DNA of 64,000 nucleotides, taken from NCBI RefSeq assembly GCF_026571515.1, contig NW_026861124.1:62001-126000 (forward strand), given 5' to 3'. A program made the position numbers and the translations under genes. The notes under the pieces are model-generated. The model saw only the letters and a program-made list of their open reading frames with translations, was not told the DNA's origin and ran no database searches. The stretch is from Ruditapes philippinarum. Lineage: Eukaryota. Below, piece after piece: positions 4,450-49,500 of the stretch. The first letter of the stretch is position 1, and each line of letters starts with the position of its first letter.

Positions 4450-4563
4450 TTTTACCCAGAGGACATGTGTGGTGATCATCACATTTACTGTACAAGTGAT
4501 CAATACACAGGATGTGTTTGCCGAATAAGAGTAGCTTCCGGAACACCGTGCGGGCATGCCAGG
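4450..4563 (+). CDS. Exon N1, ADAMTS/ADAM-type Cys-rich (disintegrin-like) segment
   Basis: tttcag|...|gtgcgt, 114 nt, phase 0-0; FYPEDMCGDHHIYCTSDQYTGCVCRIRVASGTPCGHAR. Confidence 0.75.
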
Positions 4564-10500: not shown

Positions 10501-13500
10501 TCATTGCAGGTGGCAGATTTGTAACTGAACCTTGCAGTGGTTATACTGTTGTGCTTTGTAAATGAGAAATTTTTTATTCTGTAACGTTTTTACTCTTAAA
10601 TCTTGTACAGTGAAAGTTGAGACAACCGGACATCGAAGGGAAAATCTTGGACTGATAAATCATCCAGTATTTAGAGAGTTACGATTTTCTCAACTTTCAC
10701 TATATATATTAATCTAAAATCTTTCATTGCAGATGGCAGATTTGTTACTGAACCTTGTACAATATCCCTCGATACCTGTGTCGATGACAACGCTGAATGT
10801 AACGGCACTGTGTGTGTCTGTATTGCTAACTTTGTTTGGAACGGATCAATTTGCGGTAAATTTTTTCATTGTTCATTTACTTCTAGATTATTTATAATAA
10901 GAAAAAAGATACTATTTCAAATGGGGTGTTTAATTTCTTAAATTTTAAGCAATCATAACCAACTTTAGGATTATTTCTATATTTTTGAAGAATAAGGAGA
11001 GCTATTGTAATCACCAAGGCATCTGGGTCGACATCACCATCACACTTAATTGGTTAAGTTTTTTGCGTGAAAGTTATTATCTCCAAAAATACTGAATTGA
11101 ATGGGTTGAAACTGCAAACTTTATTTGAGAGCATAATAGAAATTAAAGAAACAAGGTCATTTTTTTAAGGCCCATAACTCAAACTTGGATTTTAAAAGAA
11201 GTATAATTCTACATTATTCAGGCTCTAAAAGTGTTTTGCTATTAAGCACCATGCTGTCCTTCTGATTGCTCTTGTTGTCATTTATAGAAGTGTATATTAA
11301 TGTACTTAAAATTTGAGCCGATATATTTATTATCCATATTTGACCTTCGATGTACCAGTACCAACTCGGTCATATTGACAATTATATTGACTGGTTTACG
11401 TTAATATTAAGTTTTTCACATGTATACAATAAAGTTATGTTATAGTTGGAGACAGCCTGTGTGACCCCTGTGACCCTGCTATTACTACATGTGACTCTTC
11501 ACTAGTATGTAGTTCAGATACTTACAGATGTGAATGTCCCCCAGGATTTGTACAAATAGGAGATGCCTGCTGTAAGTACATTTGTGTACTTTCATTATAG
11601 AAATATTAGAATATGGTTCATCTCTTACTTATACACAATATTTTTCTGATAACATTGTAAAGATTTCACATTTTAGTGAATTTTCTGAACTTTTTTGTTG
11701 AATTTATCAATTGATATATTAGTTTACATATAATGAAAACAAACGTTATCATATTTGACTCGGACCTGTTTCTGCTATTGAGATTGCTATTTGACCTTTA
11801 CAACTATTGAGTTTAGATCATTTACTACTGTAAAATCAGTTTTGTTTTTTTTGAAGCATAATACATATGTTAACTGTGAAATATTATATAATTGAATACA
11901 GTACATTATACAATATAATATAATAAAAAATATAAATGAGCCACGTCACGACACGTCTGCGCAGTCTGATCTGGATCCATGCTGGTCGCAAACCCATTAT
12001 GTTGGTTTTGTCGTGACGTGACTCAAATGTTTGGTATACTTGTAAAGCATAATATCTGATACAGTTTGAAAATAATTCAAAATAAATACCTTAGTCATTT
12101 TCATTTGGGGGTGGGGAGTTCATGTGATCGTCTTATGTTAGTAAATGAACCGTTGGTATGTCCCCACAAAGTGGGAGCATATAGCGTTGCACTTGTCCGT
12201 CCGTCCATCCGTCCGTCCATCTGTACGTCCTGAAATCTTGTGAATGCAACTCCTCTTAAACTGGATGGCAGATTTTGCTTAAACTTTCAGGGATGAACAA
12301 CCTTAATGTGTAGATGGTAGTAAAGGAAGGAATTTTTGCAGCGACCAAATTTAACAGAATTATGGCCCTTTGTTGATTTTTAGCTCGACTATTCGAAGAA
12401 CATGAGAGCTATTGTAGTCGCCCCGGCGTCGGCGTCGGTGTCGGCGTCAGCGTCCGCGTCGGCGTCTGCGTTGGTTAAAGTTTTTTGTAAAGTCAAATAT
12501 CTCAATAATTACTTGAGATATTCAATTGAAACTTACAATACTTATTTATAGTAACAAGGTACATCAGATTGACAAGTTTGATAACTCTGCCTACAATATT
12601 GACAGAATTATGCCCCTTTTTAACTTAGAAATTTTGGTTAAAGTTTTTTGTAAAGTCAAATATCTCAATAATTACTTGAGATATTCAATTGAAACTTACA
12701 ATACTTATTTATAGTAACAAGGTACATCAGATTGACAAGTTTGATAACTCTGCCTACAATATTGACAGAATTATGCCCCTTTTTAACTTAGAAATTTTGG
12801 TTAAAGTTTTTTGTAAAGTCAAATATCTCAATTATTGCTTGAGATATTCAATTGAAACTTACAATACTTATTTAAAGTAACAAGGTACATCAGATTGACA
12901 AGTTGGATAACTCTGCCTACAATATTGACAGAATTATGCCCCTTTGGAACTTAGAAATTTTGGTTAAAGTTTTTTTGTAAAGTCAAATATCTCAATTATT
13001 GCTTGAGATATTCAATTGAAATTTAAAATACTTTTTTATAGTAACAATGTACATCACTTTGCAAAATTGCATAACTCTGCCTGCAAAATTTGAAGAATTA
13101 TTTGCCCCTTTGAAACTTAGAAATTTTGGTTAAAGGTTAAAGGTCTTCAAAGATATTTACTTGAAACTTTACACATGCACTTAGATTCATAATTGGAGGG
13201 TCATAATTGTATGTCACTAACCAAGTTCCATAACTCTATCTTGCATTTAGGCTGATTCATATCCCCTTTTCTACTTAGTCTCTTGGTTAATGTTTACATG
13301 CAAGTTTTACATATCTCAATAACTATTAAAGATATTTATCTAAAACTTCACATATGCATTTAGGGTCATAATTGTAGGTCACTGACAAAGATCCATAATT
13401 CTATCTTGCATTTAGGCTGATTTTTCTCCCCTTTTTCAACTTAGAAATTCATGGTAAAGTTTTGCTTGTAAGCTGTTATCTCAATTACTACTGAAGGGTT

Positions 13501-19500: not shown

Positions 19501-22500
19501 AATATGTTTTTGCTTGAAGATTTTTGGGAAAAATTTAAAAACACTTCCCCCACCAGTAATTTTAATTTTTTTTGATCGAACTTGACCCCTTTTTTTACAA
19601 AAAACTGATAGCTTTAAAAAAAACATTATTGAACAATTTATAAAAGATTGGAAAATTTTTTTTCTTTTAAAGAAAAATTTAATAGAAATATAAAATTTTT
19701 TTTCGCCGTCGGGGGGGGAATTTGTGGACCCCTGTGATCCCCTTTCCCATTTAACTTTTTTCAGGGTCTTTCTTGTAGTTCCCACTTAAGGGGTGAATGC
19801 CCTTTTGGTCAAAAAATGGGGACGCCCGTTAAAGTAAAATTTTAAAATTTTACATGTGAAAAAACCCCAGATAAATGTAAATTTTTCTTTTTTTTTTAAA
19901 CACCCCACAACCCCTATTTTTTTAAATTTTAGACAGGGGTTTTAGTAGTAACACTTTTCTTACCTGGGTTTTTCCCAATAAAATTAAATGAAAATATTTC
20001 CTATGGCACCCCCCAAATATTTAAAAAAAATTTAAGGAAAAAATTCCCCAGATTTTGTTCTGTTTCAAAAAAGTAAACAATTTTTATCAGAAAATTTAAA
20101 TTTTCTTTTGCAGCAAATTTGTTTCAGAAATATACAAATAAGATAGGTAAATATACAAATCAGATAGGGTACCTGATATGATAATGTCTTGAAATTTATC
20201 TGACTAATCTATTTATAGATGGAACACGTGTTGGTGAATCATGCACGACATCACTGAACACGTGTATAGATGACTATGCAGTGTGTAATGGCACAGTGTG
20301 TGATTGCAAGGAGACATATGTGTGGAATGGCACACACTGTAGTAAGTGAACATCAGCTTTGACATAAATTAACTTTTAGAAATAAGAATATACAGATAAA
20401 TTGCCAATATAAATTTTTTGTCAAAGCAATTTCTGTTATTGAGATGCGTAAAGTATTTGTTAGGCTAGATTTGTATGTTTTAATTATATAAAATGTATTT
20501 ATTTTTCCCTTTCCCGGGTTTAGTATACCTAAACTACAAAGTTTTTTATTTATTTTGAATTTTTAAAAAGGGAAATTTTTTAACCAAAACCCTTTTATTT
20601 GAAACAAAAATTTTAAATTAATTTTGTCGTTCCCTTTTCTAAAAATTTAAAAATTTTAATTTGCATTTAAAAAAAAAAAAAACAAAACACCCATAAAAAA
20701 TGCAACACTGACTATGGGAAAAATAAAATATACCCCAAAATTTCAAAATAAAACCTTTTAATTATGTTGTTATTATTTTGATTTTAAGTCAGCCACTAAG
20801 CGTTTTTTCGCTATATTTTTAGATGGACAGAATCTATGTGACCCATGTGATGCTCTCTTCCACCCTGCGACTTCAGTAGTCCCGTAACCCCCCATAAAAA
20901 CCCATGGTGAATGTCCCAAATGGGAGGTACAGATTTTGATGAATGCCCGTTTTTATTAAAATGTTGATTTGGGGTTTTTTAGTTTTAATAATGTTTCTTT
21001 ATCCTTTCAAAAGTTTCCCTTTTTTTTTAATTGGTTTTTAGTGTTTCATATTTTAATAAACATATAAATCATCATTTATATGATAATGATGTTGTGAAAA
21101 AGACATTGGCAATGAAAGATGATGATGACAACAAAAGCAATTATGACAATGATGATAATATTGATAAGATGATGATATTGATGATGATANNNNNNNNNNN
21201 NNNNNNNNNNNNNNNNNNNNNNNNNNNNNNNNNNNNNNNNNNNNNNNNNNNNNNNNNNNNNNNNNNNNNNNNNNNNNNNNNNNNNNNNNNNNNNNNNNNN
21301 NNNNNNNNNNNNNNNNNNNNNNNNNNNNNNNNNNNNNNNNNNNNNNNNNNNNNNNNNNNNNNNNNNNNNNNNNNNNNNNNNNNNNNNNNNNNNNNNNNNN
21401 NNNNNNNNNNNNNNNNNNNNNNNNNNNNNNNNNNNNNAATGATAATGACAACAATGTTAATGATGATGATGGTGGTGGCAAATATGATGATGATGCCAAA
21501 TATGATGATGATAATGATAACGTTGATGATGATGACGGCAAAGATGGCAATGATGATGACCTATGAATTCGATCAAGATCTATTTTGTTGACTGCTCACT
21601 TTAATTATTCTGATACAAAATTCCCATGACCTCATGACCTCAAAATGGACTGTTCCAACTGAAATCAAATTTGGGTGAGTCCATTTTGCATATGAAGCAG
21701 AACAAGGGGTGAACAAATTCTTGTCATCTTAGCCTTTACTCTTAGAGTATTGTTATAACTAATTTATCTGGTAAATTTTAAGATGGGAGACTGGTGACTG
21801 AAAGATGTACAACGGCCACTGACACCTGTATTGATGATAATGCAGAATGCAATGGCACAGTGTGTGATTGTGTTGATGGGTTCACTTTTAATGGATCAGT
21901 TTGTCGTAAGTTTTTTTTACATTTAATGGTTACTGAAATATGATGTTAATTAAGATGGGTATTAAATGAGTGTACTAAGTTTCAAATATATTTATTGTCC
22001 AAGTTCAGATTTATTGAACTTGTTGAATAAAATTGTATGAAACTTGCTTCATTTGATTAAATACAATTCAGCTTGTTCAATAAATTCTGTACAGGATATA
22101 TATGTATTTACTAATTCACATCACATACCCTGAATAATAAAGAAAAAAAGAGATATCAGTTTGAAATAGCTACACTTTTGGAAAAATACATGATTTGGCT
22201 CATTTGCATAGTATATCCACACCAATGCTGTAACGTTTTTACAAAGGTTTGATTATAAGGCTTTTTTGCATGTTGTTTTGACACTTTGAACATTTTCTGT
22301 GGATAGTATTTGCTTCAGGCACTGTTTTGCTCTTACTTTGTAGTTGGCACTGATTTATGTGACCCATGTGACCCGACAGCAAATACTTGCAACGTGGATC
22401 TAGTATGCAATAGTGACACATACAGATGTGAATGTCCCACAAACCAAGTGCAAATTGGAGATTCGTGCTGTAAGTTTTCATAAACTTTTTTATCACAAAT

Positions 22501-25500: not shown

Positions 25501-28500
25501 CGATGGTTATTTTTGGAATGGAACTATCTGTGGTAAGTACAATGTGATTTTCAATTGTTCATGTAGATTTACAGTCGGTAACTATTACATTTGGTAACAT
25601 TAAATTTTTTTACTTCAAACCACTCGCCCCTCACCACTGTAGGTTTGAATCCTACCAGGGACTTTGGAATCTGTTGGGTGAGGAAGCTTTCCAGTTTGCT
25701 TAAGAAGCTTCAGTGGTAACTCAGGCGCCCATTCATACCTGAAATAATGCATGGAAGGGCAACATGAGGCCTTTCCCCACAGTAAAGCTGGAAAGTCAGC
25801 ATTTGCACTTTACAGTGGTTTGCAACTTAAAACCCAATAAATGTGATAGTAAGAATATATTGTTAGCACTGCAATAATTTAATTAAAAATGATTTCTTTC
25901 AACTTGTTAAAAATTTTATGCTTTGTAAAGCAATTTTTTTAATAAAATTTGCATTTTTAAATCATTAGGAAATGTTTTTAACAATTATTATTTTCACATT
26001 AACAGTTGGAACATCAATATGTTCCCCTTGTGATTCGTCCAATCCATGTGATTCTGATCTGGAGTGTAACCCGAGCACTTACAGATGTGAATGTCCTGCT
26101 GATCGTGTCCAAATAGGGAACGAGTGCTGTAAGTAAAGATACTGTGAATTCACTTAATTTTGTTCACATGAATTTTCGTGGTTTTGCCACAAAGAAATTT
26201 TTATGGATACTTAAGTTTGTAGACTGTTTATTTTTCCAAAGATAAAATGTAAAACTGAATTTAGATGGAATAGTTATTTCAATAGATTTTTGGGTAATTT
26301 TATATATAGATTTATACATTTCTTGTGATTTTATTCAACTTCCTGTCTGCTTGCTTAGCACGATATATAGGGGGAGCATCAAATTTGTAATACAGTGGTT
26401 GTTGGTTTAAACATAGGGCAAGGCAAATGTTCTTTGTGGCAAATGATCTCGGACATTGAGTCCTAAATAGACATTTGTCCCTTACGGCTGATTCAGAATT
26501 AATGAGGGATAAGTAGTCAGTCACTTGTTGAGATACTGGTAATAACTGGTTAGTTGTCTAAGTTGTTCTGAGATGGACCTACTACTGAGATAGGACAAAA
26601 ATGTGTTAATTTCGTCATTCAAAATGAAATAAACAAACCAACAAATTATTTAAGTTTCAGGTACTTTAATCATCATCTGATAGGTTTAAGTTGGTCGTGC
26701 ATCCATGTAATTTTATTGAATATTTAACTCGAATTCAAACATTGTATCAATTAGTTATTGATCGTTATTTTTTCATATGATAGACGGAACCCGTGTGACA
26801 GAGCCATGCACAAGTGACGTCGATACGTGTATAGACTGTAACGCTGATTGTAACGGGACAGTGTGTGACTGTGTCACTGGGTACACTTGGAATGGATCAG
26901 TATGCTGTAAGTTTAATTTTGTGTACCATTTCAGGGATAATCCAGCTAATGAATTTTTGTATATTTATATGATGTAAATATTGCTATTCAGTCACTACAT
27001 ATTTTCAAATTTTCTTTAAAAAATTTGATATCCACTAAGTTTAAAATCACATAATCTTTCTTATTAGTTTTGAACATGTCTTCCTAATTGTAAAGACATT
27101 TGATGAAATAATATTGTTTACTGTTTTGAATCTTGATAGTATGAAGTCTGGAGGTCTGATGCAGTAATGTTTAATAATCAACACAACACTTCGGCCTAAG
27201 TTGTTGATTACAAATACAGTTCAACTTTGTTCGCTAGAACTCGGATCACTCGAATACCTCTCTTCGCTCGAACTCATCAACCCAGTCCCGGGAAAATTCC
27301 TATATAATATATATTGTTCTACCTCAGATGGCTAGGACACCGATCGATCGGACTCTCGAACCTGATTTCTGGTCCCTTCGGCAGAAATATAGTGAAAATC
27401 ACACCTTTTCGGTCGAACGCAAGAAGACAAGTCAGTATGTCGGAAATAAATGACAATCGGCGACACATGATTTTAACACCTCATGATCGTGACATAGGTG
27501 ATACAAAATAAGAGGTGTTATAAGCAATTCGTTTGTTATGATTATATTGTTGATTTGCCGTATATAGTAACGATAAAAAGAAAACGACTTGTGAAATAAG
27601 TGAAATATGCATGCCAATAAAGAATGACTTTTACCCGAACGGTTTTAATTACAACCGTGGTTCATGAAAAGTGAATCGTAACAGTGTTATCTATTTATAG
27701 AATGATACTTGTATGTGTGTTTATTTTAGTAAATGACTATAAATAGATGCTGCTGTAAATGTTTTAATAAATATGTCATTCATTTATTTTTTTTTAATTG
27801 AATTCATCCCATTATAAACATAAAAATATATTTTGAACATTGTTCAACAAGTTTGGTGTGATTGCCCAATCGAACTCAACCAATTACTATATGCATGAAT
27901 ATAGATTAACACAGTGTACCGTTGATACTATAAAACACAGGGATAATTATTCTGAATATGAAACATGTGAAATATTTGACAAACAGAATAATTGATGTAC
28001 TAACAAACAATTATATTGACACATTTATCATTCGACAGATGTAAGCTAGGAAAACCTTTAGGCATTTGATCAACGTAATAATAGTTCAACCTTGGTTGGC
28101 TCGAACTACCGATCTCTCAAACAAATTTTCACAGGCCCTCCGAGTTCGAGCGAACGAAGTTCGACTGTACATAAGTGATAGACATTTATATAACCAAATT
28201 TTATTATGTACAATCAAAGAATCAGATTAAATAGCATATAAAGATGTTGCTGGCAAAAATTTTTTATGAAAATTGAAAAAAAAGTGAAAGCCCCCATTTC
28301 CATATTCTTATGTTCACATACAGTAAATTTGTTGCAGTTCATGTCTCTGTTATTTGGAACACTTGAACTTTTTTATGAAAACTGAACAAAGACAGGTTCT
28401 CAAGCAAAATACTTAATGGTAATTCAAATGGGTTAAGCAGAAATGTTTTACATTCAGTACTGGCGTTATAAGAATTTTGCAAACATTTACCTTACAAATT

Positions 28501-31500
28501 AGATACTTTGGTATTTTATACTGTATAATCTTTCTCATTCTATTCTTTGTTTCTCATCTTTTCTTTAGCTTTTTACCTTTTATATAATATAGGGTCTGCA
28601 TTATTGCGTGCTATTTTCTGTTTGCAGTGGGGACTAACCTGTGTGACCCCTGTGACCTGGCGACGACCACATGTGATGATGACCTGATCTGTAATCCAAA
28701 CACATACACATGTGAATGTCCGACTGATCATGTACAAATAGGAGACTCCTGCTGTAAGTTTATATATTTGAAATTTTCAATTTGTAACTTTAAAAAATAA
28801 ATTTCTAGATATTTTGTCATTTAAGAATATAAACTGTCAATGTGACACAAAATGGGAAAGAAAATATGAGCTGTGTCATGACAAAACCAACATAATGGCT
28901 TTGCAACCAGCATGGATCCAGACCATCCTGCACATCTGTGTTCTAGAGTTGGTAAGCAAACAGCATGGATCCTGATCGGACTGCGCAGAGGCGCAGGCTG
29001 GTCTGGATCCATGCTGGTCGCAAACCCGCTATGTTGATTTTGTCGTGACGCGGCTCAAATAAAGAAATTTAATTTTTGTTCTCACAGATGGTACTCAGGT
29101 CACAGAATCATGTACAACTACGCTAGACACATGTACAAATGACTTCGCCGATTGTAATGGGACAGTTTGTGATTGTATAAGTGGATATTCATGGAATGGT
29201 AGCAGATGTGGTAAGAATTGTTATTAAGATTGCAGATTTTAGTCCCTATTTGAACATAAATCGTTATTTGTTTTTAGATATTTTTATACTGCATGGTAGT
29301 TTTGAAGTAACCGGTCTAAGTCTTTAGATTTGAAAAGACTATAAATGCATGATTTTCCATGATAACCATGCTTGATAGAATATTTGTGACAGTTTTAAAA
29401 GACCATTAAACTTTCAGAGACACTGCAGTGTGACAGTTTTAAAAGACACTTATTTCTTAGTACTGTGGTTGGTTCTAGGAATGGATTTGAGATTGTTTCA
29501 ATAAGCTTTAATACTCACTGCTTTCAGCACAATCAAACTAAAATAAAGTAGTTATAAACTAACGTGAATAATTGTATAATTTGCAAATTATATAACTGCG
29601 TATTTTGTTTTTCTTCATGTTGTAACAAATTTATATTACAGTTGGAGGAAACCTATGTGACCCCTGTGACCCTTTAACAGTGGCTTGTGATGATGGCCTT
29701 GAATGCAGTACCGGCACATATAGATGTGAATGTCCAGATGATGAAGTTCAGATTGGGGATAATTGCTGTGAGTATTTGTATAAAACATGTTCTATTATCT
29801 AATGGTTTGCAAATAAACTATAATATATATTGCAACAACATACGATATCACTAAGAAATGTTTCAACTGAATCATACAGACGTTTGATTTTTGAACAAAC
29901 ACTATGGTACGTTGAGCTGAGGGACGTTCCATTACTGTTTAGTGGTGGCGTTAACAGAAATACCCACTGACAGGGGTGAAGCAGTTAAAAGCTTTGACAA
30001 GTCAACAGTTCACTTCAACTTTGCGTTTGCACAGGATTTCAGAGGTTCAATTAAACAGTTGTAAATAAGGAATTTAAAGTATTTATATATGGCATAAGGT
30101 TAAAAATTATGTAAGTATTTCATGCATATCATTAGCACGGGAGAGGAAGTGTTACACGAAGGATGGAGTTCTTATGATAACTTGTTTGGAGTTCTTATGA
30201 TAACTGTCACGGAGTTCCTGGAAAACGTTACGGATTTCTGTGGAAAACTTTTCTATGTACTTGGAGAAAATGGTTATTTTTAACTTTAAATGGGGAGTTT
30301 GAGGTGCTTAATTAAACTTTGATAATTAAGCTTGCGCTACATATTGTATTATGTTTCAGAAAAAAATCTTTTAGTCCATATTATATTTGAAAATTAAATT
30401 CATATGCTACAAAAACAAAAAAGTGAAATAAATGAAAATATTAGTTATGTAATTTAGTTTTTATGAATATGGAAGAATAATAATCAAACATGGCTTCCAA
30501 CACAAACAGGAATTAGCTCTAGTGTAACTGTTAAAGGGAAACTCATTATTTGGGTGGGTGGTGGGGGGCTTACAAGGTTCTGCCAAGTTTCTCCTAAACA
30601 GTTCCCCTTGAGTAAGATATCTTATATTGTCTCTATCTGTAGCTGGAGTAAGATTCTTATTAGATGTTTATTAAGTTGACTAATATTTAATAACGTCAGT
30701 GTAGACGATGATGGACAAGAGACGTAAGTTTAATGATTAAACCTAATACTTAGCTTATGACATTCCTTTGATATATTTTAGATGGGACACATGTAGGTGA
30801 TGATTGTACGACTAGCTTGGACACTTGTATTGATGACCATGCTGAGTGTAATGGAACAGTCTGTGATTGTATAGAGGATTGGGTATGGAACGGAACTCAT
30901 TGTGGTAAGTCTGTTTCTGAATCTCATTGTGGTAAGTATGTGTCTGGAGTTCATTGTGGTAAGTCTATGTCTGAATCTCATTGTGGAACGTCTATGTCTG
31001 GATCTCATTGTGGTAAGTCTATGTATGGAGTTCATTGTGGTAAGTCTATGTCTGGATCTCAATGTGGTAAGTCTATGTCTGGATCTCATTGTGGTAAGTC
31101 TATGTCTGGATCTCATTGTGGTAAGTCCATGTCTGGATCTCATTGTGGTAAGTCTGTGTCTGGATCTCATTGTGGAACGTCTATGTCTGGATCTCATTGT
31201 GGTAAGTCTATGTCTGGATCTCATTGTTGTAAGTGTAAGTCTGGATCAAATTGTGGTAAATCTGTCTGAATCTCATAGTGGTAAGTCTGTGTCTAAATCA
31301 CATTATGGTCAGTCTATGTCTGGATCTCATTGTGGTTAAAGTCTGTGTCTGAATGTCAATCTGGTAAGTCTATTTCTGGATGTCAGTGTGGTAAGTCTAT
31401 GTCTGGATGTCAGTGTGGTAAGTCTGTGTTTGGATGTCATTGTGGTAAGTTTATGTCTAGATCTCATTGTGGTAAGTTTATGTCTAGATCTCATTGTGGT

Positions 31501-34500
31501 AAGTCTATGTCAGAATCTCAATGTGGTAAGTAGATGTCTGGATGTCATTGTGGTAAGTCTATGTATAAATCTCATTGTGGTAAGTCTGTGTCTGGATCTC
31601 ACTGCGGTATGTCTTTGTCTGGATCCCATTGTGGTAAGTCTATGTCTGGATCTCATTGTGGTAAGTCTATGTCTGGATCTTATTGTGGTATGTGTGTCTG
31701 GATGTCATTGTGGTAAGTCTAGTCTGGATTTCATTTGTGGTAAGTCTATGTCTGGATTTCATTGTGGTAAGTCTATGTCTGGATCTTATTGTGGTATGTG
31801 TGTCTGGATGTCATTGTGGTAAGTCTAGTCTGGATGTCATTGTGGTAAGTCTATGTCTGGATTTCATTGTGGTAAGTCTATGTCTTGATTTCATTGTGGT
31901 AAGTCAATATCCTGATATTATTGTGGTAAGTCTGTCTGGATCTCAATGTTGTAAGTCTATGTCAGGATCTCAATGTGGTAAACTTGACTGGATGTCAAAA
32001 AATCTGTAAAAGTAGGCCCAATGGAACTATTTACTAATGTGTTTGCTGACACAGATGTTCTTATATTTCTGGAAGGTTGCCCAGGTATGAAAAAAACGAA
32101 AGTAAGCTGCACAATTTGGAAAATATGGTTCCAGTTATGGTTAGGCAATAATTATAATGACTGTTAGCTCAAAAGTCTTTCCTTAATAGATAAAATAAAA
32201 CAACTAGAGCAAAAATTATGTTGGTTTGTTTCTTGAGTGATATTTTATTACATTAAAAAACTTTTGTGACGTTTGTTTACAGTTGGACCAAATTTATGTG
32301 ACCCATGCGATCCATTGACAGAATCATGTGATACTGGCCTTGTATGTAGTTCTACCACATATAGATGTGAATGTCCGTCTGGACAAGTGCAGATAGGTGA
32401 CAACTGCTGTAAGTTTATTTTAATCTATCTTTAGCAGAGGTAATTAAGATAGTATGTGAAAAGTAAAACAAACAACAGACATGATTTTATGATAGTAAGG
32501 TAACCCTAAAAGGGGTGAAAATGTACACTTACAGTAAAAAAAATGGTTATGCTCATTTTATAAATCAAATGATGTTATTATACAAATTCAGCTAAGAGCG
32601 TATTACTTCATGTATTTTGAATATTAGAATACTAAAGTTTCCTGTATAGATGTAGTCAATAAAAAAGCGTAAATATGAAAAACTCAAAATAGTACCAAGA
32701 ATATACATGTATATACAAGAGTTTGACTGTTTGGTTATGGATGCATGTAACAACCTATTTTGCCATTTCTGTGGTTTACTTACTGCAGTGATCTGGAGTG
32801 AAAACTACCAGCACCACCACTACAGATTGAGAGACGGACAAATCCATTTAAGATACAAATGTATTAAATTGGATAAGGGTAAATATATCCCTAAAGAGAA
32901 GTTTTTTGGCTTGTCTGTGTTATGAGAAAATATCAGTCAAATGGAATGAATAATGAAGTGCTGCTTTTTCCAAACACCCTGCTGTGTTGTCCTCATTTAT
33001 ATTTATGTCACTCCAGGTTGTTTCCCCTGGAACACACTCGTGCAAAATTATGTAAATGTCACGATCTCTTTTTGTTTTGTTATTATAGATGGTACACGTG
33101 TTGGAGAAAACTGCTTGTCGTCACATGACACGTGTATTGATGACAACGCGGGATGTAATGGCACGGTTTGTGTTTGTGATGACGATCATGTTTGGAATGG
33201 AACTATTTGTGGTAATATTAATAAAATCTTGACAGTCTTTGGGTTTTTCCCCCTTATTTTAGCATCAAAGGTAGATAACTGTGGCAATACACTCAACATA
33301 AGTTTGTGTAAATACATGTATATATTTGTTCAGACATAAAATCCTTGCATCTATGTAAAGTTTTGCAGCTGTTCAAAATAAAATACTTTTTAGCTCACCA
33401 GAGCCGAAGGCTCAGGGTGAGCTATTAGTATCAAAGGGGCATGCTGCGGCATCCATCGTCTGTTGTCATGCGTCAACAATCGTCTTCTTCTCTGAAACTA
33501 CTAAGCCGATTTACTTCAAATTTTGTCTGTATTATCCTTGTGACAGTCACACTTGAATTTTCTCATATCATTCCAATTGGCCCCTTTTAGGGGTCAGCAG
33601 AGCTAAAAATAGAAAAACCTTTAAACATCTTCTTCTACAGAACTAATGGATGGATGATCACCAAACTTTGTCTGTAGCATTCTTGGGTAGTCTTTTATCA
33701 AATTTGCTCATATTAATTTGATTGGGCCCTTTTAGGGGTCTCTAGGGCTAAAAATAGAAAAACCTTTAAACATCTTCTTCTACAGAACCAATGGATGAAT
33801 GATCACCAAACTTTGTCTGAAGCATTCTTGGGTAGTCTTTTATCAAGTTTGGTAATATGAATTTGATTGGCCCCTTTTAGGGGCTGCTAAAGCTAAAAAT
33901 AAAAAAACCTTTAAACGTCTATTTCTACAGAACTAATTAATGGATGATCACCAAACTTTGTCTGTAGCATTCTTATGAAGTCTTTTAACAAGTTTGCTAA
34001 TATTATTTTGATTGACCCCTTTTAGGGGTCTCTAGGGCTAAAAATAGAAAAACCTTTAAACATCTTCTCCTACAGAACTTATTGATGGATGATCACCAAA
34101 CTTTGTCTGTAGCATTCTTGGGTAGTGTTTAATCAAGTTTGCTCATATTAATTTGATTGGCACCTTTTAGGGGCCGCTAAAGCTAAAAATAGAAATACCT
34201 TTAAATGTCTATTTCTAGAGAACTTATTGATGGATGATCACCAAACTTTGTCTGTAGCATTCTTAGGTAGTCTTTTATCAAGTTTGCTAATATTATTTTG
34301 ATTGGCCCCTTTTAGGGGTCTCTAGGGCTAAAAATAGAAAAACCTTTAAACATCTTCTCCTACAGAACTAATTGATGGATGATCACCAAACTTTGTCTGT
34401 TGCATTCTCGGGAAGTGTTTTATCAAGTTTGCTCATATCAATTTGATTGGCCCCTTTAAGGGGCCGCAAAAGCTAAAAATAGAAAAACCTTTAAATGTCT

Positions 34501-37500
34501 ATTTCTAGAGAACTTATTGATGGATGATCACCAACTTTATCTGTAGCATTCTTATGAAGTCTTTTATCAAGTTTGCTTATATTATTTTGATTAGCCCCTT
34601 TTACGGGTCTCTATAGCTAAAAAAAGAAATACCTGTAAATGTCTATTTCTACAGAACTAATGGATGAATGATCACCAAACTTTGTCTTAAACATTGTTGG
34701 GTAGTCTTTTATCAAGTTTGCTCATTTTATTTTGATTGGCCCCTTTAAGGGGCCGCTTAAATTAAAAGTAGATATACATTTAAACATCTATTGCTACAGA
34801 ACTAATTGATGGTATTGCTACAGAACTAATTGATGGATGATTACCAAACTTTGTCTGTAGCATTATTGGGTAGTCTTTTATTAATTTTGCTCATATTAAT
34901 TTGATTAGCCCCTTTTAGGGGCCGCTAAAATTAAAAATAGAAATACGTTTAAACATCTTCTCCTACAGAACTAATTAATGGATGATCACCAAACTTTGTC
35001 TGTAGCATTCTTGGGTACTCTTTTATCAAGTTTGCTTATATTAATTTGATTGGCCCCTTTTAGGGGCCACTAAAGCTAAAAATAGAAAAAGCCTCCGAAT
35101 ATCATTTCCTACTGAAATAATTAATAGATGATCACCAAACTTAGTAGCATTCTAAGGTAGTCTTTTATCAAGATTGCTCATATTAATTTGATTAGCCCCG
35201 TTTAAGCTAAAGCTTAAATGCCTCAGGTCATGGCATTTCTTCAAATTATTGTTTAAACATATTCTATGCTCAAATTTAATAGAATATATTGACATTCCAA
35301 CACTGATAAGCAGTTGTTTCTGGTAAGCGACTCAGGGCCATCATGGCCCTCTTGTTTATCAAATTCTTGTGCATTAACTATGTAACATTACAAGTTCCGA
35401 CTGTTAGAGTTATCATCAAGATTTGTTAGATTTTCTTAAAGATTACATATAAACCTAATGAGCATGCGTGCCTGCTACCATATTATTGTTTTCTCAAATA
35501 ATGATGTCACATTGGAAAACATACATGTCACATGACAAAAATGTACAAAAAATAGATATCCAACAACTGTCTAGAGGGGAAGATGGACTTCAGTGTTATT
35601 ATAATACAACTCCATATTTACTGTTTCATAAGGGTCCGTCATACTAAATTTTGTATTGATGTTAAACTATGTTGGTATACATTTCAGTCGGTCCAAACCT
35701 GTGTTCAAACTGTGATCCTAATACCGATTCCTGTGACACCGGTCTTATATGTAACCCGGTTACATACAGATGTGAATGTCCAACTGGTCAAGTGCAATAT
35801 GATGATGATTGCTGTAAGTGTTTGATTATTTGTTACGGGGGTTTGACAGTGTCCGGGTATCTCATGTGTTGCTGTATAATGTTTATTTAATAATGCAATA
35901 TTAAAGGAACTCTACTGAGGTCCAAAAGCCTAAAAGCATTAACTTGATTTTCTTATAAAGATCAACTGTGGCACTATACAAAATATTTAAGAAAATCGTA
36001 TTTTTGTGATTTTTTAAACCAATTTGAGTGAAAAGCGTTTTTTTCAATTTTAAACATTTTTCACAATGGACACATTTCTAGTTTCTTATTTTATTCTACT
36101 CATCTAGAGTGTAAACCTTTAAAGTTTATATATTTGGAGTATAATTTTAATTGTAATATTCTTTCAGACGGGACTCATATTGGTGATTCATGCACGACAA
36201 GTTTGAACACGTGTATTGATGATAACGCTGGATGTAACGGGACAATATGTGACTGTTTACCTGGGTCTACTTTTAACGGAACATTTTGCGGTAATTCATA
36301 TTCTCTTTATTGTATCTCTCTTTATTGCATGCCGGGAAAATTGTTGACTGCTAAAAACAAATTTCTTTGTTAACAAAACAATGTTAGAGAACTTAAACTT
36401 CTTCATTTCAGACTTACAATGGCTCTTTATAAGGTAGTTAAATTCAATCATTGCATATTTTGTGTGTATATCAAGTCGTGTTTTTAGTAGCATTTTACTT
36501 GGATGTTGATGTCAATTGTTCAGTTTAGCTAGACGAACTGTTAAGACAGTTTTCTTAACATACAAATTTAGTGTACATGTATAGGCATCAAATAATTACG
36601 GAGATTGAAGAGTGTATGAATTTATCCAAAAGTTTGACATATGATATATATTATAATAATGCAAATAAATCTCTTAAAGTCTGATTGGCTTAAACACTTA
36701 TATACTATGCAATAGAAGGTCATGAAGTACTGAAGCACACACAAATTACTATGTATTTTTCTACATCATAGACGGTTAACTTTGTGTATTGTATGCATAA
36801 ATGTTCTTATTGTGTTCTGTTCTTTATGACACATTTCTTGATTGCAATGTCATCACTTCATTAAAGTAAATATAGTGAAAAGTTACAATGCTATGACAGC
36901 ATTATTCTTGAATTACTTTATATTGCGCAGCGTTAGTGTATCCATTCATTACATGCATCTTTTTCCGCACTTCTTTGAAAACAGTCTAAAGTTGCTGGGT
37001 TTTCTTATGAACTTGTCGTCATTAACAATTTGCCTTATTATAAGTTTGTAATACAAGTACTGATGGGACTTAGTTGTAAATATAGCCTTCCTGACATTAA
37101 TATAACCCTCGGCTTTCCTGACATAAATATAACCCTTGACTTTCCTGACATAAATATAACCCTCGGCTTTCCTGACATAAATATAACCCAGGCTTTCCTG
37201 ACATAAATAAAACCCTCGACTTTCCTGACATAAATATAACCCTCGACTTTCCTGACATAAATATAACCTTCGACTTTCCTGACATAAATATAACCCTTGA
37301 CTTTCCTGACATAAATATAACCCTCGACTTTCCTGACATAAATATAACCGGCAGGTGATATTTATCTCATTCAGGTTGTATTTTTGTCTTATATATTGAG
37401 TCAGCAACTCGTATAACTCATTATATATTCTATGAGGTTTATGGATTCATTCAATATAATTATTTACAATATGAATTTTACAGTGGGTACACAACTGTGT

Positions 37501-43500: not shown

Positions 43501-46500
43501 TTTTTCTGTTATCATACACTGTATTCCATTGTTTTTCCATTTTCCCTTTTCACACATAATTTACATGATTTAATCAAAAATGGTAGCAAATGATGCTTAT
43601 GTTCATATATGTTTATCTTATCTTACAGCTGGTTCAATTATCAATGACCCATGCAGTCCTGAAAATCCGTGCTCAGGAGTGCTTGTTTGTAACGTAAACA
43701 CGTCCAAATGTGCATGCCCATCTAATCTAGTGCAAATTGGAGACCAGTGCTGTAAGTTTTAAATTTGTAACTTTTTTTTGTTGTAAATTATTGTTTAAAA
43801 AAATATCTTATGCAAAGAAAAGATGTTTGTTTACTGGTGTGGAAGTATCATTTTGATATGAAAGGTTGCGTAATTTTTGATAAATTTATCTTTGAATGCA
43901 TAATGTAAGATATCTAGGTCTTAAAAAAATTTGAGATACTCAAGACTATAGTGCTTGACTGAAATCGGAAATATTATCATTGTAAAAAGATGATTTTTAT
44001 GACTACAAACGAAACTCAATCTTTGTTTTAAAGATGGAACACTGATTGGTGAAACCTGCACTACCAGTCTGGACACGTGTATTGACGACTTTGCTGAATG
44101 TAATGGGACAGTTTGTGACTGTCAAGATGGTTATGAATATAACGGAACATTTTGTCGTAAGTATATACATGTACTGTTATAGTATGAGCCGCATCACGAC
44201 AAAACCAACGTAATGCGTTTGTGACCAGCACGGATCCAGACCAGCCTGCGCATCCACGCAGTCTGATCAGGATCCATGCTGTTCGCTATCAGTTTCTGTA
44301 CTTGTAAAAGAGTTGGTAAGCGAACAGCATGGATCCTGATCAGACTGGCAGTTTTCTTATCATTATAAGCTTTATAGTGTTGGGACTACTGTTAGGTCTT
44401 ATGACCTTAATGTAGATTTTTGTTAACATATTTTTGTCAGGACAGACCATTACAGCCATTGTAAAACTTTTAAAGTAAAAAGTAAAATAATTTTCTTGTA
44501 TATGTATTTTTTTAGTTGGGACTAACCTTTGCGACCCTTGTGATCCTTTGGCATCTACGTGTAGGTCCGATCTTGTATGTAGCTCTGACACCTACAGATG
44601 TGAATGTCCAGACGATGAAGTTCAAGTCGGAGACAATTGCTGTAAATCTTATTACTATTGTATTTTTTTCCTCTCCAAAAATTTATATGAAATTTTGATT
44701 TTGAGTTTGTTTAAGACATTTTTGATTTATGACGTACATAACATATAATTTTGATACATGTTTTTCCATCTTTTTTCTAAGTTTTTTTTTTAATATGAAC
44801 CTAATTATGTTTATATAGTAGTATTAAAACATAAATTATATAAGAATGGTGAACAGTCTTTGCAAAAACATAAACTAAATGTACATTTACGGGTAGTTAT
44901 GTTTTGTCAACTACAGTGCAACCTGTGTACAACAACCCCTCTGTAGAGCAATTACCTCTTTACAACAACCAGTATCATGTATTGCTAAAGTAATAATTCA
45001 CAGTATGTTTTACCTCTTCAAAAGTAACACCTCTCAAGAACAGCCAGAATCTTTGACTGTTTAAGAGAGTTGCTCTGCAGAGGTTTTAAAATCCTGTAAC
45101 TCAATCTTTTATGGTTTTATATCATAAACATAGTACACAAATGAAGATTTGTCAATATTTTAAGTTCCAAAAAGCATTATTTGTAAAGATAATTATTACC
45201 AAATTCACATTTCATGTTAATAAAGGGAGGTAATTAGAAATATATTTTCTTTAAAGTCTAACTAAATTTATTAATAAGAAATGTTTTAATGATTACATAT
45301 TATGTGGACAAATATTTGCAGTATATAATTTAAATATTCTTGGATTTTTTTTAATTGTTTGATAAGGATAATTTTATACATATATAAAATTTCACTAAAG
45401 TGTGGTAACAACCTTAATTACAACATACAGGGTCTTTAATGTATTGTTTTAGTAACAGTCTGCATTTATATCATTACAAGATATGGTCAATATTTCAGAT
45501 GGAACACACGTGGGTGACGACTGCACAACTTCTCCGGACACATGTATTGATGATCATGCTGCGTGTAATGGCACAGTGTGCGATTGTATCAGTTGTTACT
45601 CATGGAATGGCACCAGATGCCGTAATATTCTTGACATTTTCTGACATGATCAATATATTACAATGTATTAAAGGCACATTATGCTTCAGAAACAAATAAA
45701 TTTTTACTTCAAATTCAAACATGAATTTTATAATGTTAAAATAATGGTTGTAGAGAATGTTAGATGCTTGTTACCTGAAGAAAGTAGCATAAATGTGAAA
45801 TAATTTGTCACAAAAGTAGCAAAATGTAAACAAAGTAGTATTTTGACTTCCATACAAAATACCAATTTACCATAACTGTACTTGTTTTCTAAAAAGCAAC
45901 AGATGAAAGAGATGGTTCTGGTTAATCGGCCAATGAGTAACTTTTTGTATGCTGTAAAAGTACACCAAAATTAAAAAGTTTTTGAGAAATAAAACTAAAG
46001 GCATTTCTGAGGCATAATGGGTCTTTTACGTTTTTCTGTCGTAAAAAGAAAGGACAACATGTAATTGTATTCTATTATCCAAGTTTCATATATGTGGCTA
46101 GCTTATCAGCTTAACAGTTTTACATCTAGTCACTGGAATGTATCAGTTCTGTCAATCTGAGGTTGTTGGGAATCTTCCCTATGCTTATGCCAGCCCACAA
46201 AATTATTCCTTCCTCTGAAGAAACCATTTAAAAATTGGTGATTTCTGAAGCAATGCAGATTAGTTTTTGTGTCGCCTTGAAAAGGTGACATATAGGGATT
46301 ACTTTTGTCGTCGGCGGCGTCGTTGTCGGCGTCGCCTAAAGCTTGTCCGGAGCATAACTCAGTCACTTTAAGTTGGATTGACTTCAAACTTGGTATGCAT
46401 GCTTCTTCCAATAACACGAAGTGCAGTGCACAAGAACAAGTACTCTGCACTTCTTAATTTTTCAGTTATTGCCCTTTGTAAATTTTCATACTTTAATTTT

Positions 46501-49500
46501 GTCCGGACCATTTCTCTTCAACTATAAAAGCTATGGACTTCAAACTTCATACAATGATAGATCTCATTAAGAAGAAGTGCAGTGCACAAGAATCGGTACT
46601 CTGCACTCCCTAATTTTTTAGTTATTTCCCTTTGTTAATTTTCATACTTTATTTTTGTCCGGCCATTTCTACTAATGTATAAAAGCTATGGACTTGAAAC
46701 TTCATAGGATGATAGATCTCATTAAGAAGAAGTGCAGTGCACAAGAATCGGAACTCTGCACTTCCTAATTTTTGAGTTATTTCCCTTTGTTAATTTTCAT
46801 ACTTTATTTTTGTCCGGGCCATTTCTACTAATGTATAAAAGCTATGGACTTGAAACTTCATAGGATGATAGATCTCATTAAGAAGAAGTGCAGTGCACAA
46901 GAACAAGTACTCTGCATTTCTTATTTTTTGAGTTATTGCCCTTTGTTAATTTTCATACTTTATTTTTGTCCGGGCCATTTCTCCAAAAGTATAAAAGCTA
47001 TGGACTTGAAACTTCATAGGATGATAGATCTCATTAAGAAGAAGTGCAGTGCCCAAGAACCAGTACTCTGCATTTCTTATTTTTTGAGTTATTGCCCTTT
47101 GTTAATTTTCATACTTTATTTTTGTCCAGGTCATTTTTCCTCAAGTATGAAAGCTATACACATGAAACTTCATAGGATGATAAATCTCATTAAAAAAAAT
47201 TGCAGTGTACAAGGACCGGTACTCATTTCTTATTTTTGAGTTTTTACTCTTTATATATTTTCATACTTTATTTTTGTCCAGGCCATTTCTCATAAATTAT
47301 AAAATATATGGACTTGAAACTTCATAGAATGATAGATTTTATTGATAAGGAGTGCAGTGCATAGAAACTGCTGCTCTGCACTTATCATTTTTTGAGTTAT
47401 TGCCCTTTGTTAGTTTTCGTATTTCATTTTTGTCCTGGCCATTTCTCCTAAACTATATTGTTCACAAGGCGACACATCCGACTCGCGGAGTTCTAGTTTG
47501 CTTCAAGAAATTAGTAGTGTCCCTATTAGGACTAAAATGAAAAAAATATATCCCAATTTCACAGACCCTCTCCAGCTCACTAGACCCCACAAGATTGAAA
47601 AAATGCTGCAGTCACAGAACATACAAACGATAGATGTTTTAATCATTTTATCATTCAGGCAAATATTTTTAGCTTATTCACATTCAAATTTTTCAGATGG
47701 CCAGTTGCTATGTGACTCATGTGATCCGATGTCCTCTACGTGTGATTCCAGTCTCGTCTGCAATGCAAACACATACAGATGTGAATGTCCGACTGATGAA
47801 GTGCAGATTGGTGATGATTGTTGTAAGTGTAGTATTTTGTCATGATAATCATTGATAACAAGAAAATCAATTATAACAAAGTCATTGGTAACAAGAAAAT
47901 CATTGATACCAAGAAAATCATTGATCACAAGAAAATCAATTATAACAAAGTCTTGATAACAAGAAATCATTGATAACAAGAAAATCATTGATAACAAGAA
48001 AATCAGTAGTAACAAAATCATTGATTTCAAGAAAATCATTGATTTCAAGAAAATCATTGATAACAAGAAAATCATTGATAACAAGAAATCTTTGATAACA
48101 GGAACCTCATTGATAACAAAAACATCAGTGATAACAAGAAATCATTGATAACAAGAAACCATTGATAAACAAGAAAATCATTGATAACAAGAAATCATTG
48201 ATAACAAGAAAATCTTTGATAACAAGAAATCATTGATAACAATTAATCATTGATAACAAGAAAATCATTGATTATAAGAAAATCATTGATAACAAGAAAT
48301 CATTGATAACAAGAAAATCATTGATAACAAGAAATCATTGTCACCAAAAATCATTGAATGAAAACTACCTACCCAGTATTGGTTTTTTTCAGCGGTTACA
48401 ATTAGAAACTGCAAGGCTGTTAAAATTGTGAATGCAGTCACCTATGATTGGCTGTTTGAAAGGTCATGAGAAGGTGACCTCCTATTGGTGTCATTAGTTC
48501 CTAATACGTTGTTCATTTTTTTTGTATTTCATTCCATATGTACCGTCATGTTTATGTTGAAAATGTTTACTTTTTAATTGTTTTACCATATTTATGTAGA
48601 GAATTTGATATATTTTATTTTATGTGCATATAGATGGGACACATGTTGGGGACAGGTGTACTAATGTTGTCAACACGTGTATTGATGATTATGCGCTGTG
48701 TAATGGTACAATATGTGACTGTATGGCAGGAACTACATGGAATGGTTCAATATGTGGTAAGATATAATCATATAGATAGACAATATTTGTTTGAATATTT
48801 TGCATGTATTTGTTTGTTTATGTGTAAAAATCTTCAATTTATGAAGACAAAATTGAAAATCTGGAAAAGTTTTTATTGTCACCTTAGTGCAATAACTGGT
48901 TAACTCCTATTAAATTAAGAAAGACTTAACCTATTACTGCACTAAGATGACATGTTCCATTTACGATATGTCTGTGTTATAAGCCTTAACACTTATAGCA
49001 ATACAATGCAACCTGTGTCGAACAGCCCTCTATAAACCATCTATCTCTTTACAACAACAGTATCAATTCTTCTCTAAGTGAGAATAAACTATAAATTTAA
49101 TTGCTGTAGAACAACCAGTCTTAGCAACAAAGGGTTTGGCTCTGGAAGGCTTGTGCATGTATTGACCAATGCATATTTATTACAAATTTAATTTAATGTG
49201 AACATATTTATAAAAAATATTGCTATGCATCTTTTTTTTTATATTTTCAGTTGGAAGTGACCTTTGTGACCCCTGTGACAGTTCAGATTCTACATGTGCA
49301 CCAAATTTTGTTTGTGGTTCCTCGTCAAGATGTGAATGTCCCGATGATGAAGTGCAGATAGGGGACAAATGCTGTACGTGTTGTTTTTTCCCCATTATTT
49401 TTTGCTAAGTTAATGAAATATGGTCTTGCCCTTGGGTACCATGGTACTTAATATTTTTGTAAATTTATAACAATGAAATCCCCTAACTTTCATTAACTTA

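What the first reader, a model, noticed from the sequence alone, without database searches (positions are those of the whole stretch)
30890..31985. A splice donor amplified ~40-fold: 27-bp minisatellite giving a ladder of in-frame 5' splice sites
Seen: the repeat unit is the B12 exon/intron junction itself (GGAxCTCATTGTG|GTAAGTCT...). It is 27 bp, or 9 codons, so the exon frame reads on as (GKSMSGSHC)n for 13 units to TGA at 31267-31269. Within that stretch I count 10 more GTAAGT donors and one GTAAAT, all in phase 1 with exonic context like the native site; two units have lost the GT. Many further donors lie beyond the stop. Inference: donor choice could insert 0-13 His/Cys/Ser/Lys-rich 9-mers, a basic and potentially metal-binding or cross-linking linker in an acidic rod. 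Distal donors would give a truncated or NMD product, so the array could act as a splicing rheostat whose setting varies with VNTR allele. It is also a dense U1 snRNP binding array. It may instead be neutral slippage.
Basis: partly seen in the sequence, partly recalled or inferred. Interest (0 to 1): 0.8.

Follow-up and report, generated by a model that had tools for sequence, protein, structure and literature searches.

The report
Splice-donor minisatellite in a clam intron
A 27-bp tandem repeat copied from one exon-intron junction has filled an intron of a giant Manila clam EB/EGF-repeat gene with about 36 look-alike splice donors, but this is a known kind of repeat ("mirage", or F7-type VNTR) and nothing found here shows the extra donors are used.

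Summary
A 27-bp, ~40-copy array lies at 30892-31981. Its unit is the last 13 nt of exon B12 plus the first 14 nt of the intron, and it occurs nowhere else in the 1.4-Gb genome (Ruditapes philippinarum). Thirteen units stay in the exon frame up to the TGA at 31267. Eleven more in-register in-phase donors lie before that stop, and 33 GTAAGT lie in the whole array.

The functional reading found no support:
- Variants in the 13 in-frame units have pN/pS of about 1.1, against 0.27 for the gene's real B exons.
- The donor motif varies as much as the rest of the unit.
- Three of six frames are open through the array.
- Distal units carry frame-shifting indels, and blocks of units are recent copies.
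- Each unit would add one unpaired Cys to a disulfide-rich rod.

The kind is already described. In human F7 only the first donor is used. IFI6 and CBS use the first donor plus the next two. Amphioxus "mirage" repeats leave splicing undisturbed. This scan noted two other junction minisatellites in the same genome (s1-808180, s1-803824).

RNA evidence could not be obtained: the gene is silent in the two true RNA runs laid.

Verdict: most likely a neutral intron-inflating minisatellite, and a new member of a known kind.

The parts
30782..30904 (+). Exon B12, an EB/EGF-like module of 123 nt, phase 1 at both ends. Its last 13 nt are the exonic part of the first repeat unit.
   Evidence: AG acceptor at 30780-30781 and GTG|GTAAGT donor. 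It aligns with 25 paralogous B exons that share invariant Cys and NG[TS]xC. All 26 B exons give weak Pfam EB hits.
30892..31981 (+). 27-bp minisatellite of 40.6 copies. Each unit is 13 nt of exon end plus 14 nt of intron start. It carries 33 GTAAGT, 4 GTATGT and 1 GTAAAT.
   Evidence: TRF, pattern search against shuffles, unique in the genome, donor list, weight-matrix scores, unit-by-unit alignment.
30905..31266 (+). Proximal block of 13 indel-free units that continue the exon frame, about (GKSMSGSHC)13. Units 5-11 are nearly identical to each other.
   Evidence: ORF 30772-31266. Units 0-12 are all 27 nt. Mean pairwise difference is 1.4 of 27 for units 5-11 against 4.5 for units 13-39. pN/pS about 1.1.
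31267..31269 (+). First in-frame stop (TGA). It is created by a 2-nt deletion in unit 13 (31255-31279, 25 nt).
31660..31870 (+). Higher-order duplication: units 28-31 are repeated as units 32-35, with lag-4 identity.
   Evidence: Distance matrix: 28=32, 29=33, 31=35. Elsewhere in the array, 3=10, 6=7=11=27 and 20=21.
31982..32282 (+). Non-repetitive remainder of the intron (301 nt), ending in a polypyrimidine tract and the AG acceptor.
   Evidence: Sequence. It is single-copy in the assembly.
32283..32408 (+). Exon A13 (126 nt, phase 1 at both ends), the acceptor exon for the B12 donor.
   Evidence: The junction codon G+TT gives Val, as in RefSeq-modelled B-to-A junctions of the same gene (C-V-G in P0002).

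Best explanation
This is a junction-spanning ("mirage", F7-IVS7-type) minisatellite. A 27-bp segment straddling the B12 exon/intron boundary was duplicated. It then expanded by slippage and unequal exchange into about 40 units, which took the intron from about 300 nt to 1378 nt.

I infer that the array evolves neutrally and is removed as intron. Productive mRNA is made from the first, authentic donor at 30904/30905, spliced to 32283. That donor is the first one met downstream of the B12 acceptor, and it gives the 123-nt exon size that every B exon of this gene has (exon definition, or 5'-to-3' scanning). Any use of the next one or two pseudo-donors would be minor noise.

Shown here: the anatomy, uniqueness in the genome, equal strength of the donors, absence of coding or motif constraint, and the mode of expansion. 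Inferred: which donor is actually used.
For: - Anatomy and uniqueness.
- Mode of growth: identical units and blocks at lags 1, 4 and 7, and a young homogeneous core in units 5-11.
- No coding constraint: variants in the 13 in-frame units give S = 4.5 and N = 18.5, so pN/pS is about 1.1-1.2. An omega of 0.3 or less is rejected at p < 0.01. The same count on the gene's 25 real B exons gives 0.27.
- No constraint on the donor: the 9 donor positions carry 14 distinct variant types and the other 18 positions carry 35. Eight of 41 units have lost GTAAGT.
- Units 13-40 carry about 8 frame-shifting indels.
- Three of six frames are open through the array, so the exon-frame ORF is not special.
- The roughly 30 exons downstream in the window keep open frames, splice sites and invariant Cys. 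Productive splicing across this intron has therefore been maintained while the units diverged by about 15%.
- Tandem arrays are common in this gene's introns. The long B-to-A introns are the ones that hold arrays, and the median intron is about 560 nt.
- Precedents: in human F7 IVS7 only the most upstream of 5-9 identical donors is used; LMNB2 and PDGFA use only the authentic donor (PMC1557585). Amphioxus mirages do not disturb regular splicing (PMC3087553).
- No protein holding such 9-mers next to an EB module was found among 1.84 billion representatives or in the word searches.
Against: - There is no RNA evidence at all for this junction. The two true RNA-seq runs have zero depth on every exon of 28500-33500. 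The two other runs behave like genomic or Hi-C DNA.
- The pseudo-donors are as strong as the native one, and no RNA structure masks them (z = +1.4).
- In IFI6 (12-nt unit) and CBS (31-nt unit) the two proximal pseudo-sites are used constitutively, and 27 nt falls in that short-unit range.
- The first 13 units have no indel, while the later units have about 0.3 per unit (roughly p = 0.02). Recent homogenisation explains this equally well.
- The splicing rules come from mammals, not molluscs.
Confidence: 0.7

Rival explanations
1. IFI6/CBS-type partial ladder. The authentic donor dominates, but the one to three nearest pseudo-donors (+27, +54, perhaps +108) are used constitutively at a measurable level. 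This would give in-frame 9- or 18-residue inserts (GKSVSESHC, GKYVSGVHC) between modules B12 and A13, without any selected function.
For: - The pseudo-donors are identical in strength and phase to the native one.
- The unit is short (27 nt), as in IFI6 (12 nt) and CBS (31 nt), where the two proximal pseudo-sites are used (PMC1557585).
- No masking structure was found.
Against: - In F7 (37-nt unit) pseudo-sites of equal or even higher strength are never used.
- Each insert adds one unpaired Cys to an all-disulfide EB/EGF rod.
- pN/pS is about 1, even in units 0-2.
- No RNA data exist either way.
Confidence: 0.22
2. The array is a selected device in which VNTR length sets donor choice. It would produce 0-13 basic His/Cys inserts, or divert transcripts to stop-containing NMD isoforms (a rheostat), or act as a U1 snRNP binding array that controls processing of the giant pre-mRNA.
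For: - 36 strong U1-type sites lie within 1.1 kb.
- 13 units are in frame and indel-free.
- The array is unique in the genome.
Against: - There is no constraint on the peptide or on the donor motif.
- Frames are broken distally.
- The expansion pattern is typical of neutral minisatellite turnover.
- Other, non-junction arrays inflate neighbouring introns of the same gene.
- The same genome holds other junction minisatellites, according to earlier scan notes. I did not check those loci.
- No homologous repeat peptide was found.
Confidence: 0.04
3. Assembly artefact. The array, or much of its length, was generated or inflated by the assembler.
For: - No haplotig or second assembly was available for comparison.
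- Short-read depth over the array is patchy.
Against: - The units differ from each other in a structured way, with variants, indels and higher-order copies, unlike a collapsed or stuttered repeat.
- The array lies in continuous sequence, far from the window's N runs at 4638-4765 and 21190-21437.
- Independent reads of X21 and X22 lay on parts of it at 90% likeness or more. The patchiness fits libraries cut at GATC, a site that most units contain.
Confidence: 0.03
4. The repeat is real coding sequence. B12 would be a long exon that encodes (GKSMSGSHC)n and is spliced from a distal donor.
For: An open frame of 165 codons runs through exon B12 and the first 13 units.
Against: - pN/pS is about 1.1, against 0.27 for real exons.
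- Two of the three + frames and one minus frame are equally open.
- All 25 paralogous B exons end at the same C-G|GT position.
- No related protein was found.
Confidence: 0.01

Closest known systems
Human F7 intron 7 VNTR (Borensztajn et al. 2006, PMC1557585)
   Same: In both, the first monomer of the minisatellite spans the exon-intron boundary, so the authentic donor is followed by identical, functional pseudo-donors. Both arrays are intronic.
   Different: - F7 has a 37-bp unit (4 nt exon plus 33 nt intron) in 5-9 copies, and a weak donor (TGG/gtgggt). Its unit is not a multiple of 3.
- Here the unit is 27 bp (13 + 14) in about 40 copies, with a strong GTAAGT donor, and it is in frame.
- For F7 it was shown by experiment that only the first site is used. 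Here donor use is unknown.
Human IFI6 (6-16) exon 2/intron 2 minisatellite (Turri et al. 1995) and CBS intron 13 31-bp VNTR, as summarised in PMC1557585
   Same: Both reiterate the splice donor many times (25 pseudo-sites in 6-16, 15-20 repeats in CBS). The units are short. For 6-16 the inserts are in frame; that detail is from my memory of Turri et al., a paper the library does not hold.
   Different: In those genes transcripts from the two proximal pseudo-sites were demonstrated. Here no transcript data exist. Those are mammalian genes, and this one is a bivalve gene.
"Mirage" minisatellites of amphioxus (Adh3, globins BflGb6 and BflGb9; PMC3087553)
   Same: Both are tandem duplications of an exon/intron boundary in an invertebrate. 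The units keep AG/GT signals, and turnover shows concerted evolution. Regular splicing is reported as undisturbed.
   Different: - The amphioxus units are 10-160 bp with few copies (3-6 in the globins), and some are of the acceptor type.
- This array is of the donor type with about 40 copies.
- Length polymorphism was shown in amphioxus and could not be tested here.
Earlier scan notes on the same clam genome (s1-808180 in an aminopeptidase intron, s1-803824 in SURF2 intron 2)
   Same: Both are junction-derived minisatellites of tens of copies in introns of Ruditapes philippinarum genes.
   Different: Both are acceptor-side arrays, and this one is donor-side. I did not re-examine those loci.

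Membership tests
Junction-spanning ("mirage" / F7-IVS7-type) minisatellite | Head-to-tail tandem array with units in the minisatellite range (about 10-100 bp) | tested here: met
   Period 27, 40.6 copies, 84% matches.
Junction-spanning ("mirage" / F7-IVS7-type) minisatellite | The first monomer spans an authentic exon-intron boundary | tested here: met
   The array starts at 30892, 13 nt inside exon B12. The position of the exon end is fixed by 25 paralogous exons that all end at C-G|GT.
Junction-spanning ("mirage" / F7-IVS7-type) minisatellite | The splice-site consensus is reiterated in the intron | tested here: met
   32 further GTAAGT, 4 GTATGT and 1 GTAAAT. 36 sites lie within the score range of the gene's real donors.
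Junction-spanning ("mirage" / F7-IVS7-type) minisatellite | Length polymorphism between alleles (VNTR) | not testable with these tools
The short-read depth is uninformative.
Junction-spanning ("mirage" / F7-IVS7-type) minisatellite | The authentic site is used and regular splicing is preserved | tested here: inconclusive
   The gene is silent in RNA runs X23 and X24. There is only indirect support: about 30 downstream exons are intact.
Multi-donor minisatellite with used pseudo-sites (IFI6 6-16 / CBS type) | Transcripts spliced from pseudo-donors are detected | tested here: inconclusive
   No RNA coverage of the locus. No protein fragment containing B12 was found.
Multi-donor minisatellite with used pseudo-sites (IFI6 6-16 / CBS type) | The unit length keeps the reading frame, so that pseudo-donor use gives in-frame inserts | tested here: met
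   27 nt is 9 codons. Donors at n = 1, 2, 4-9 and 11-13 are in phase and lie before the first stop.
EB-module (PF01683) repeat protein (the host gene) | Pfam EB match above the gathering score | tested here: met
   The RefSeq partial model of this gene (P0002 = XP_060553466.1) scores 76.4 bits against a cut-off of 24.3. Single exons score below the cut-off: 26 of 26 B exons match weakly, with a best E-value of 9.5e-6.

The most novel reading that the evidence does not exclude
In some tissue or stage that expresses this giant EB-repeat gene, several of the in-phase pseudo-donors would really be used. A 27-nt ladder of isoforms would then carry basic His/Cys 9-mers. Use of distal donors would feed NMD. 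The number of units in an individual's allele would set the isoform mix or the gene's output, making a heritable splicing rheostat built from a VNTR.
Probability: 0.05. Interest if true: 0.6.

Novelty: new member of a known kind. Interest (0 to 1): 0.25.

Why it matters
If the extra donors are silent, as I expect, the locus is one more and unusually large example of a junction-derived minisatellite: about 36 donors of full strength, all in one intron. It adds to a hint that such repeats recur in the Manila clam genome.

Its practical value would be as a natural test of 5' splice-site choice outside mammals. The cell is offered dozens of identical strong donors at 27-nt steps, eleven of them in frame. 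Which ones it takes would show whether first-come "scanning" or exon definition holds in molluscs.

It is also a trap for gene prediction and for short-read assembly. If pseudo-donors were used in proportion to allele length, it would be a rare heritable splicing dial, but no evidence here points that way.

Tried and rejected
1. RNA evidence. The look-up of sequencing runs listed 20 small runs that hold only a high-copy, roughly 250-bp element at 30136-30382, plus four raw-read runs of the species. Read laying showed X23 and X24 with zero depth on all five exons laid. X21 and X22 are labelled RNA-seq but gave even depth of about 1-5x on introns and exons on both strands, and loose ends starting with GATC. 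I read them as genomic or Hi-C-like DNA. No joint across the array was among the 15 listed, and 617 were not shown. Both tools are now at their caps.

2. I first read the zero depth at 31172-31505 and 31673-32006 in X21 and X22 as a shorter allele. I rejected that. Coverage is patchy in unique flanks too, and GATC-cut libraries would pile up on the GATC-bearing units.

3. Protein routes to transcripts or alleles:
- The word search with B12 plus 13 units and with B12 plus 2 units found nothing.
- The full HMMER search found only family members and unrelated low-complexity proteins. None holds the 9-mer.

4. Annotation route. The RefSeq model on this contig (XP_060553466.1) jumps from window 10854 to the contig end and skips B12 and A13.

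6. The haplotig search in the assembly found only paralogous exons at 70-83% identity.

7. Masking RNA structure: none, z = +1.4. Rfam: no match.

Full report
**What is there**

The window is part of a 134-kb contig (G000:C9611:62001-126000) of a 1.4-Gb assembly. A protein match identifies the organism as the Manila clam, Ruditapes philippinarum. The match is XP_060553466.1, "neurogenic locus notch homolog protein 1-like, partial", carried on a contig of exactly 134,324 bp.

The + strand carries a giant gene made of more than 50 alternating exons of two types, each with six to seven cysteines:
- A exons are 126 nt.
- B exons are 123 nt.
- All are phase 1 at both ends, with AG acceptors and GT donors.
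- All 26 B exons hit the Pfam EB module weakly. The RefSeq partial model scores 76 bits against a cut-off of 24.

Exon B12 is 30782-30904 and exon A13 is 32283-32408. The intron between them is 1378 nt.

**The observation**

- Tandem Repeats Finder reports one array at 30892-31981: period 27, 40.6 copies, 84% matches.
- The consensus matches 26 times in the window with up to 3 mismatches, against none in shuffles. It matches nowhere else in the genome.
- The unit is the last 13 nt of B12 plus the first 14 nt of the intron. The first unit is therefore the real junction.
- The exon frame runs on for 13 indel-free units. A 2-nt deletion in unit 13 then brings a TGA into frame at 31267-31269.
- Before the stop there are ten in-register GTAAGT donors, one GTAAAT, and two units that lost the GT. 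There is also one off-register in-phase GTAAGT at 31235.
- The whole array holds 33 GTAAGT, 4 GTATGT and 1 GTAAAT.
- On a weight matrix made from the 49 other donors of this gene, the copies score the same as the native site (14.2; gene mean 12.6, sd 2.7).

**Is the array under selection?**

I ran four sequence tests.

1. *Coding constraint.* Against the unit consensus, the 13 in-frame units carry 4.5 synonymous and 18.5 non-synonymous differences over 6 and 21 sites. That gives pN/pS of about 1.1-1.2, and an omega of 0.3 or less is rejected at p < 0.01. The same count on the 25 real B exons of equal length gives 0.27.
2. *Donor constraint.* The nine donor positions carry 14 distinct variant types and the other 18 positions carry 35, so the rate per position is similar. 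Eight of 41 units no longer have GTAAGT.
3. *The open frame.* Two of the three + frames and one minus frame are open through the array. The unit simply lacks stops in those frames.
4. *Mode of growth.* There are identical units and blocks at lags 1, 4 and 7 (3=10; 6=7=11=27; 20=21; 28-31 = 32-35). There is a young, nearly uniform core in units 5-11. The distal units are older and carry indels. This is ordinary minisatellite turnover.

The absence of indels in the first 13 units (about p = 0.02 at the distal rate) is explained as well by recent homogenisation as by selection.

Two further points:
- Each unit would add exactly one Cys between two modules whose cysteines are otherwise invariant. 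I infer this would leave a free thiol in a disulfide-rich extracellular rod.
- RNA folding shows no structure that could hide the copies (z = +1.4).

**Context in the gene**

Tandem arrays are frequent in this gene's introns: 145-bp, 156-bp, 163-bp, 27-bp, 22-bp and 18-bp arrays were found. The long B-to-A introns are the ones that hold such arrays, and introns without arrays are about 310-860 nt. Without its array the B12 intron would be about 300 nt. The two other arrays I read do not include a junction.

All of the roughly 30 exons downstream in the window keep their frames, splice sites and invariant residues. I infer that productive splicing across this intron has been maintained during the time the units diverged by about 15%.

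**Transcript evidence**

None could be obtained.

- The run search returned 20 small runs that hold only a high-copy, roughly 250-bp element at 30136-30382, and four raw-read runs.
- Laid on 28500-33500, the two DNBSEQ RNA runs have zero depth on all five exons, so the gene is silent in those samples.
- The two Illumina runs labelled RNA-seq have even depth of about 1-5x on introns and exons on both strands, and loose ends that begin with GATC. I read them as genomic (Hi-C-like) DNA. They show that reads matching the array exist, and nothing more.
- No splice joint over the array was among the joints listed, but 617 joints were not shown.
- Word searches with B12 plus 13 units and with B12 plus 2 units found nothing.
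- The exhaustive HMMER search found only paralogous EB-repeat proteins, genomic single-exon ORFs and unrelated low-complexity proteins. None has the 9-mer.
- The RefSeq model on this contig joins the exon at window 10735-10854 directly to exons at C9611:129207-134067. It skips about 48 exons, B12 and A13 among them, so the annotation says nothing about this donor.

**What is known**

This architecture has been described. Borensztajn et al. (PMC1557585) studied the 37-bp VNTR of human F7 intron 7, whose first monomer spans the exon 7 boundary. Their findings:
- All pseudo-sites are functional, yet only the most upstream one is used.
- The same held when pseudo-sites were improved to a consensus value of 91.
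- Only perfect-consensus copies competed with the first site.

They list further cases. IFI6 (6-16) has 25 pseudo-sites, and CBS has 15-20 repeats of a 31-bp VNTR; in both, the authentic site plus the two nearest pseudo-sites are used. In LMNB2 and PDGFA only the authentic site is used.

In amphioxus such repeats are called "mirages" and are reported not to interfere with regular splicing (PMC3087553).

Earlier notes of this scan report two acceptor-side junction minisatellites in the same clam genome (s1-808180, s1-803824). I did not re-examine them. They gave me the "mirage" lead, which I checked in the paper.

**Verdict**

| Reading | Probability |
|---|---|
| Neutral, intron-inflating, junction-derived minisatellite, with the authentic first donor used | about 0.7 |
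| Measurable but unselected use of the next one to three donors, as in IFI6 and CBS | about 0.2 |
| A selected ladder, rheostat or U1 array | about 0.04 |
| Assembly artefact | about 0.03 |

The locus is a new, large, donor-side member of a known kind, in a bivalve. Its main value is as a natural experiment on 5' splice-site choice.

Noticed in passing
window 4447-10854, then G000:C9611:129207-134067 (L019:3207-8067): The RefSeq partial model XP_060553466.1 (P0002, 769 aa) joins the head of the gene and its first exons directly to five exons at the end of the contig. It treats about 48 well-formed A/B exons (roughly window 11400-64000) as one intron of about 56 kb. This is either a mis-model caused by the repetitive exons or a real exon-skipping isoform.
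   Followed up: partly
window 28864-29061: A palindromic, MITE-like element draws huge read depth: about 11,000-13,000x in X21 and X22, and about 350-670x in the true RNA runs X23 and X24. It has many "opposite strands" joints. So it is a very high-copy inverted-repeat element that is also present in RNA.
   Followed up: no
runs X21 and X22 laid on window 28500-33500: These runs are labelled TRANSCRIPTOMIC RNA-Seq but behave like genomic proximity-ligation (Hi-C-like) DNA. Depth is even and low on introns and exons on both strands, and thousands of loose ends begin with GATC.
   Followed up: partly
window 30136-30382: A SINE/MITE-like element of about 250 bp has more than 4,000 first-look candidates in the genome, at 91-95% identity. 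It explains why 20 small public runs "hold" 7% of the stretch.
   Followed up: partly
window 8314-9036, 12471-13135, 33576-35204, 37088-37349, 46418-47457, 47847-48357, 62429-62540: Seven other tandem arrays (units of 145, 163, 145/290, 27, 156, 18 and 22 bp) lie in introns of the same gene. The 18-bp array starts only 25 nt after an A-exon donor but does not include it. The 27-bp array at 37088 is unrelated in sequence to the finding.
   Followed up: partly
G000:C11357 (about 28-61 kb) and G000:C5858 (about 96-202 kb): Paralogous arrays of A/B exons lie on two other contigs, at 70-83% DNA identity. A representative relative (P0001, 1125 aa) ends in a VWA domain, which suggests the family architecture is a head, then (B-A)n, then VWA.
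   Followed up: partly
window 33091-33336 compared with protein P0136: A 105-aa database ORF matches exon B13 plus its intron read-through, with a few substitutions and an indel in the intron part. It is probably an allelic or congeneric genomic copy, so other assemblies of this locus exist in public data.
   Followed up: no
window 4447-7516 (head of the gene; residues 1-396 of P0002): A Pfam scan of the RefSeq model at E-values up to 0.001 finds only EB modules. No ADAM or disintegrin-type domain appears in the head that another first-stage note (s1-810601) proposed as protease-related.
   Followed up: partly
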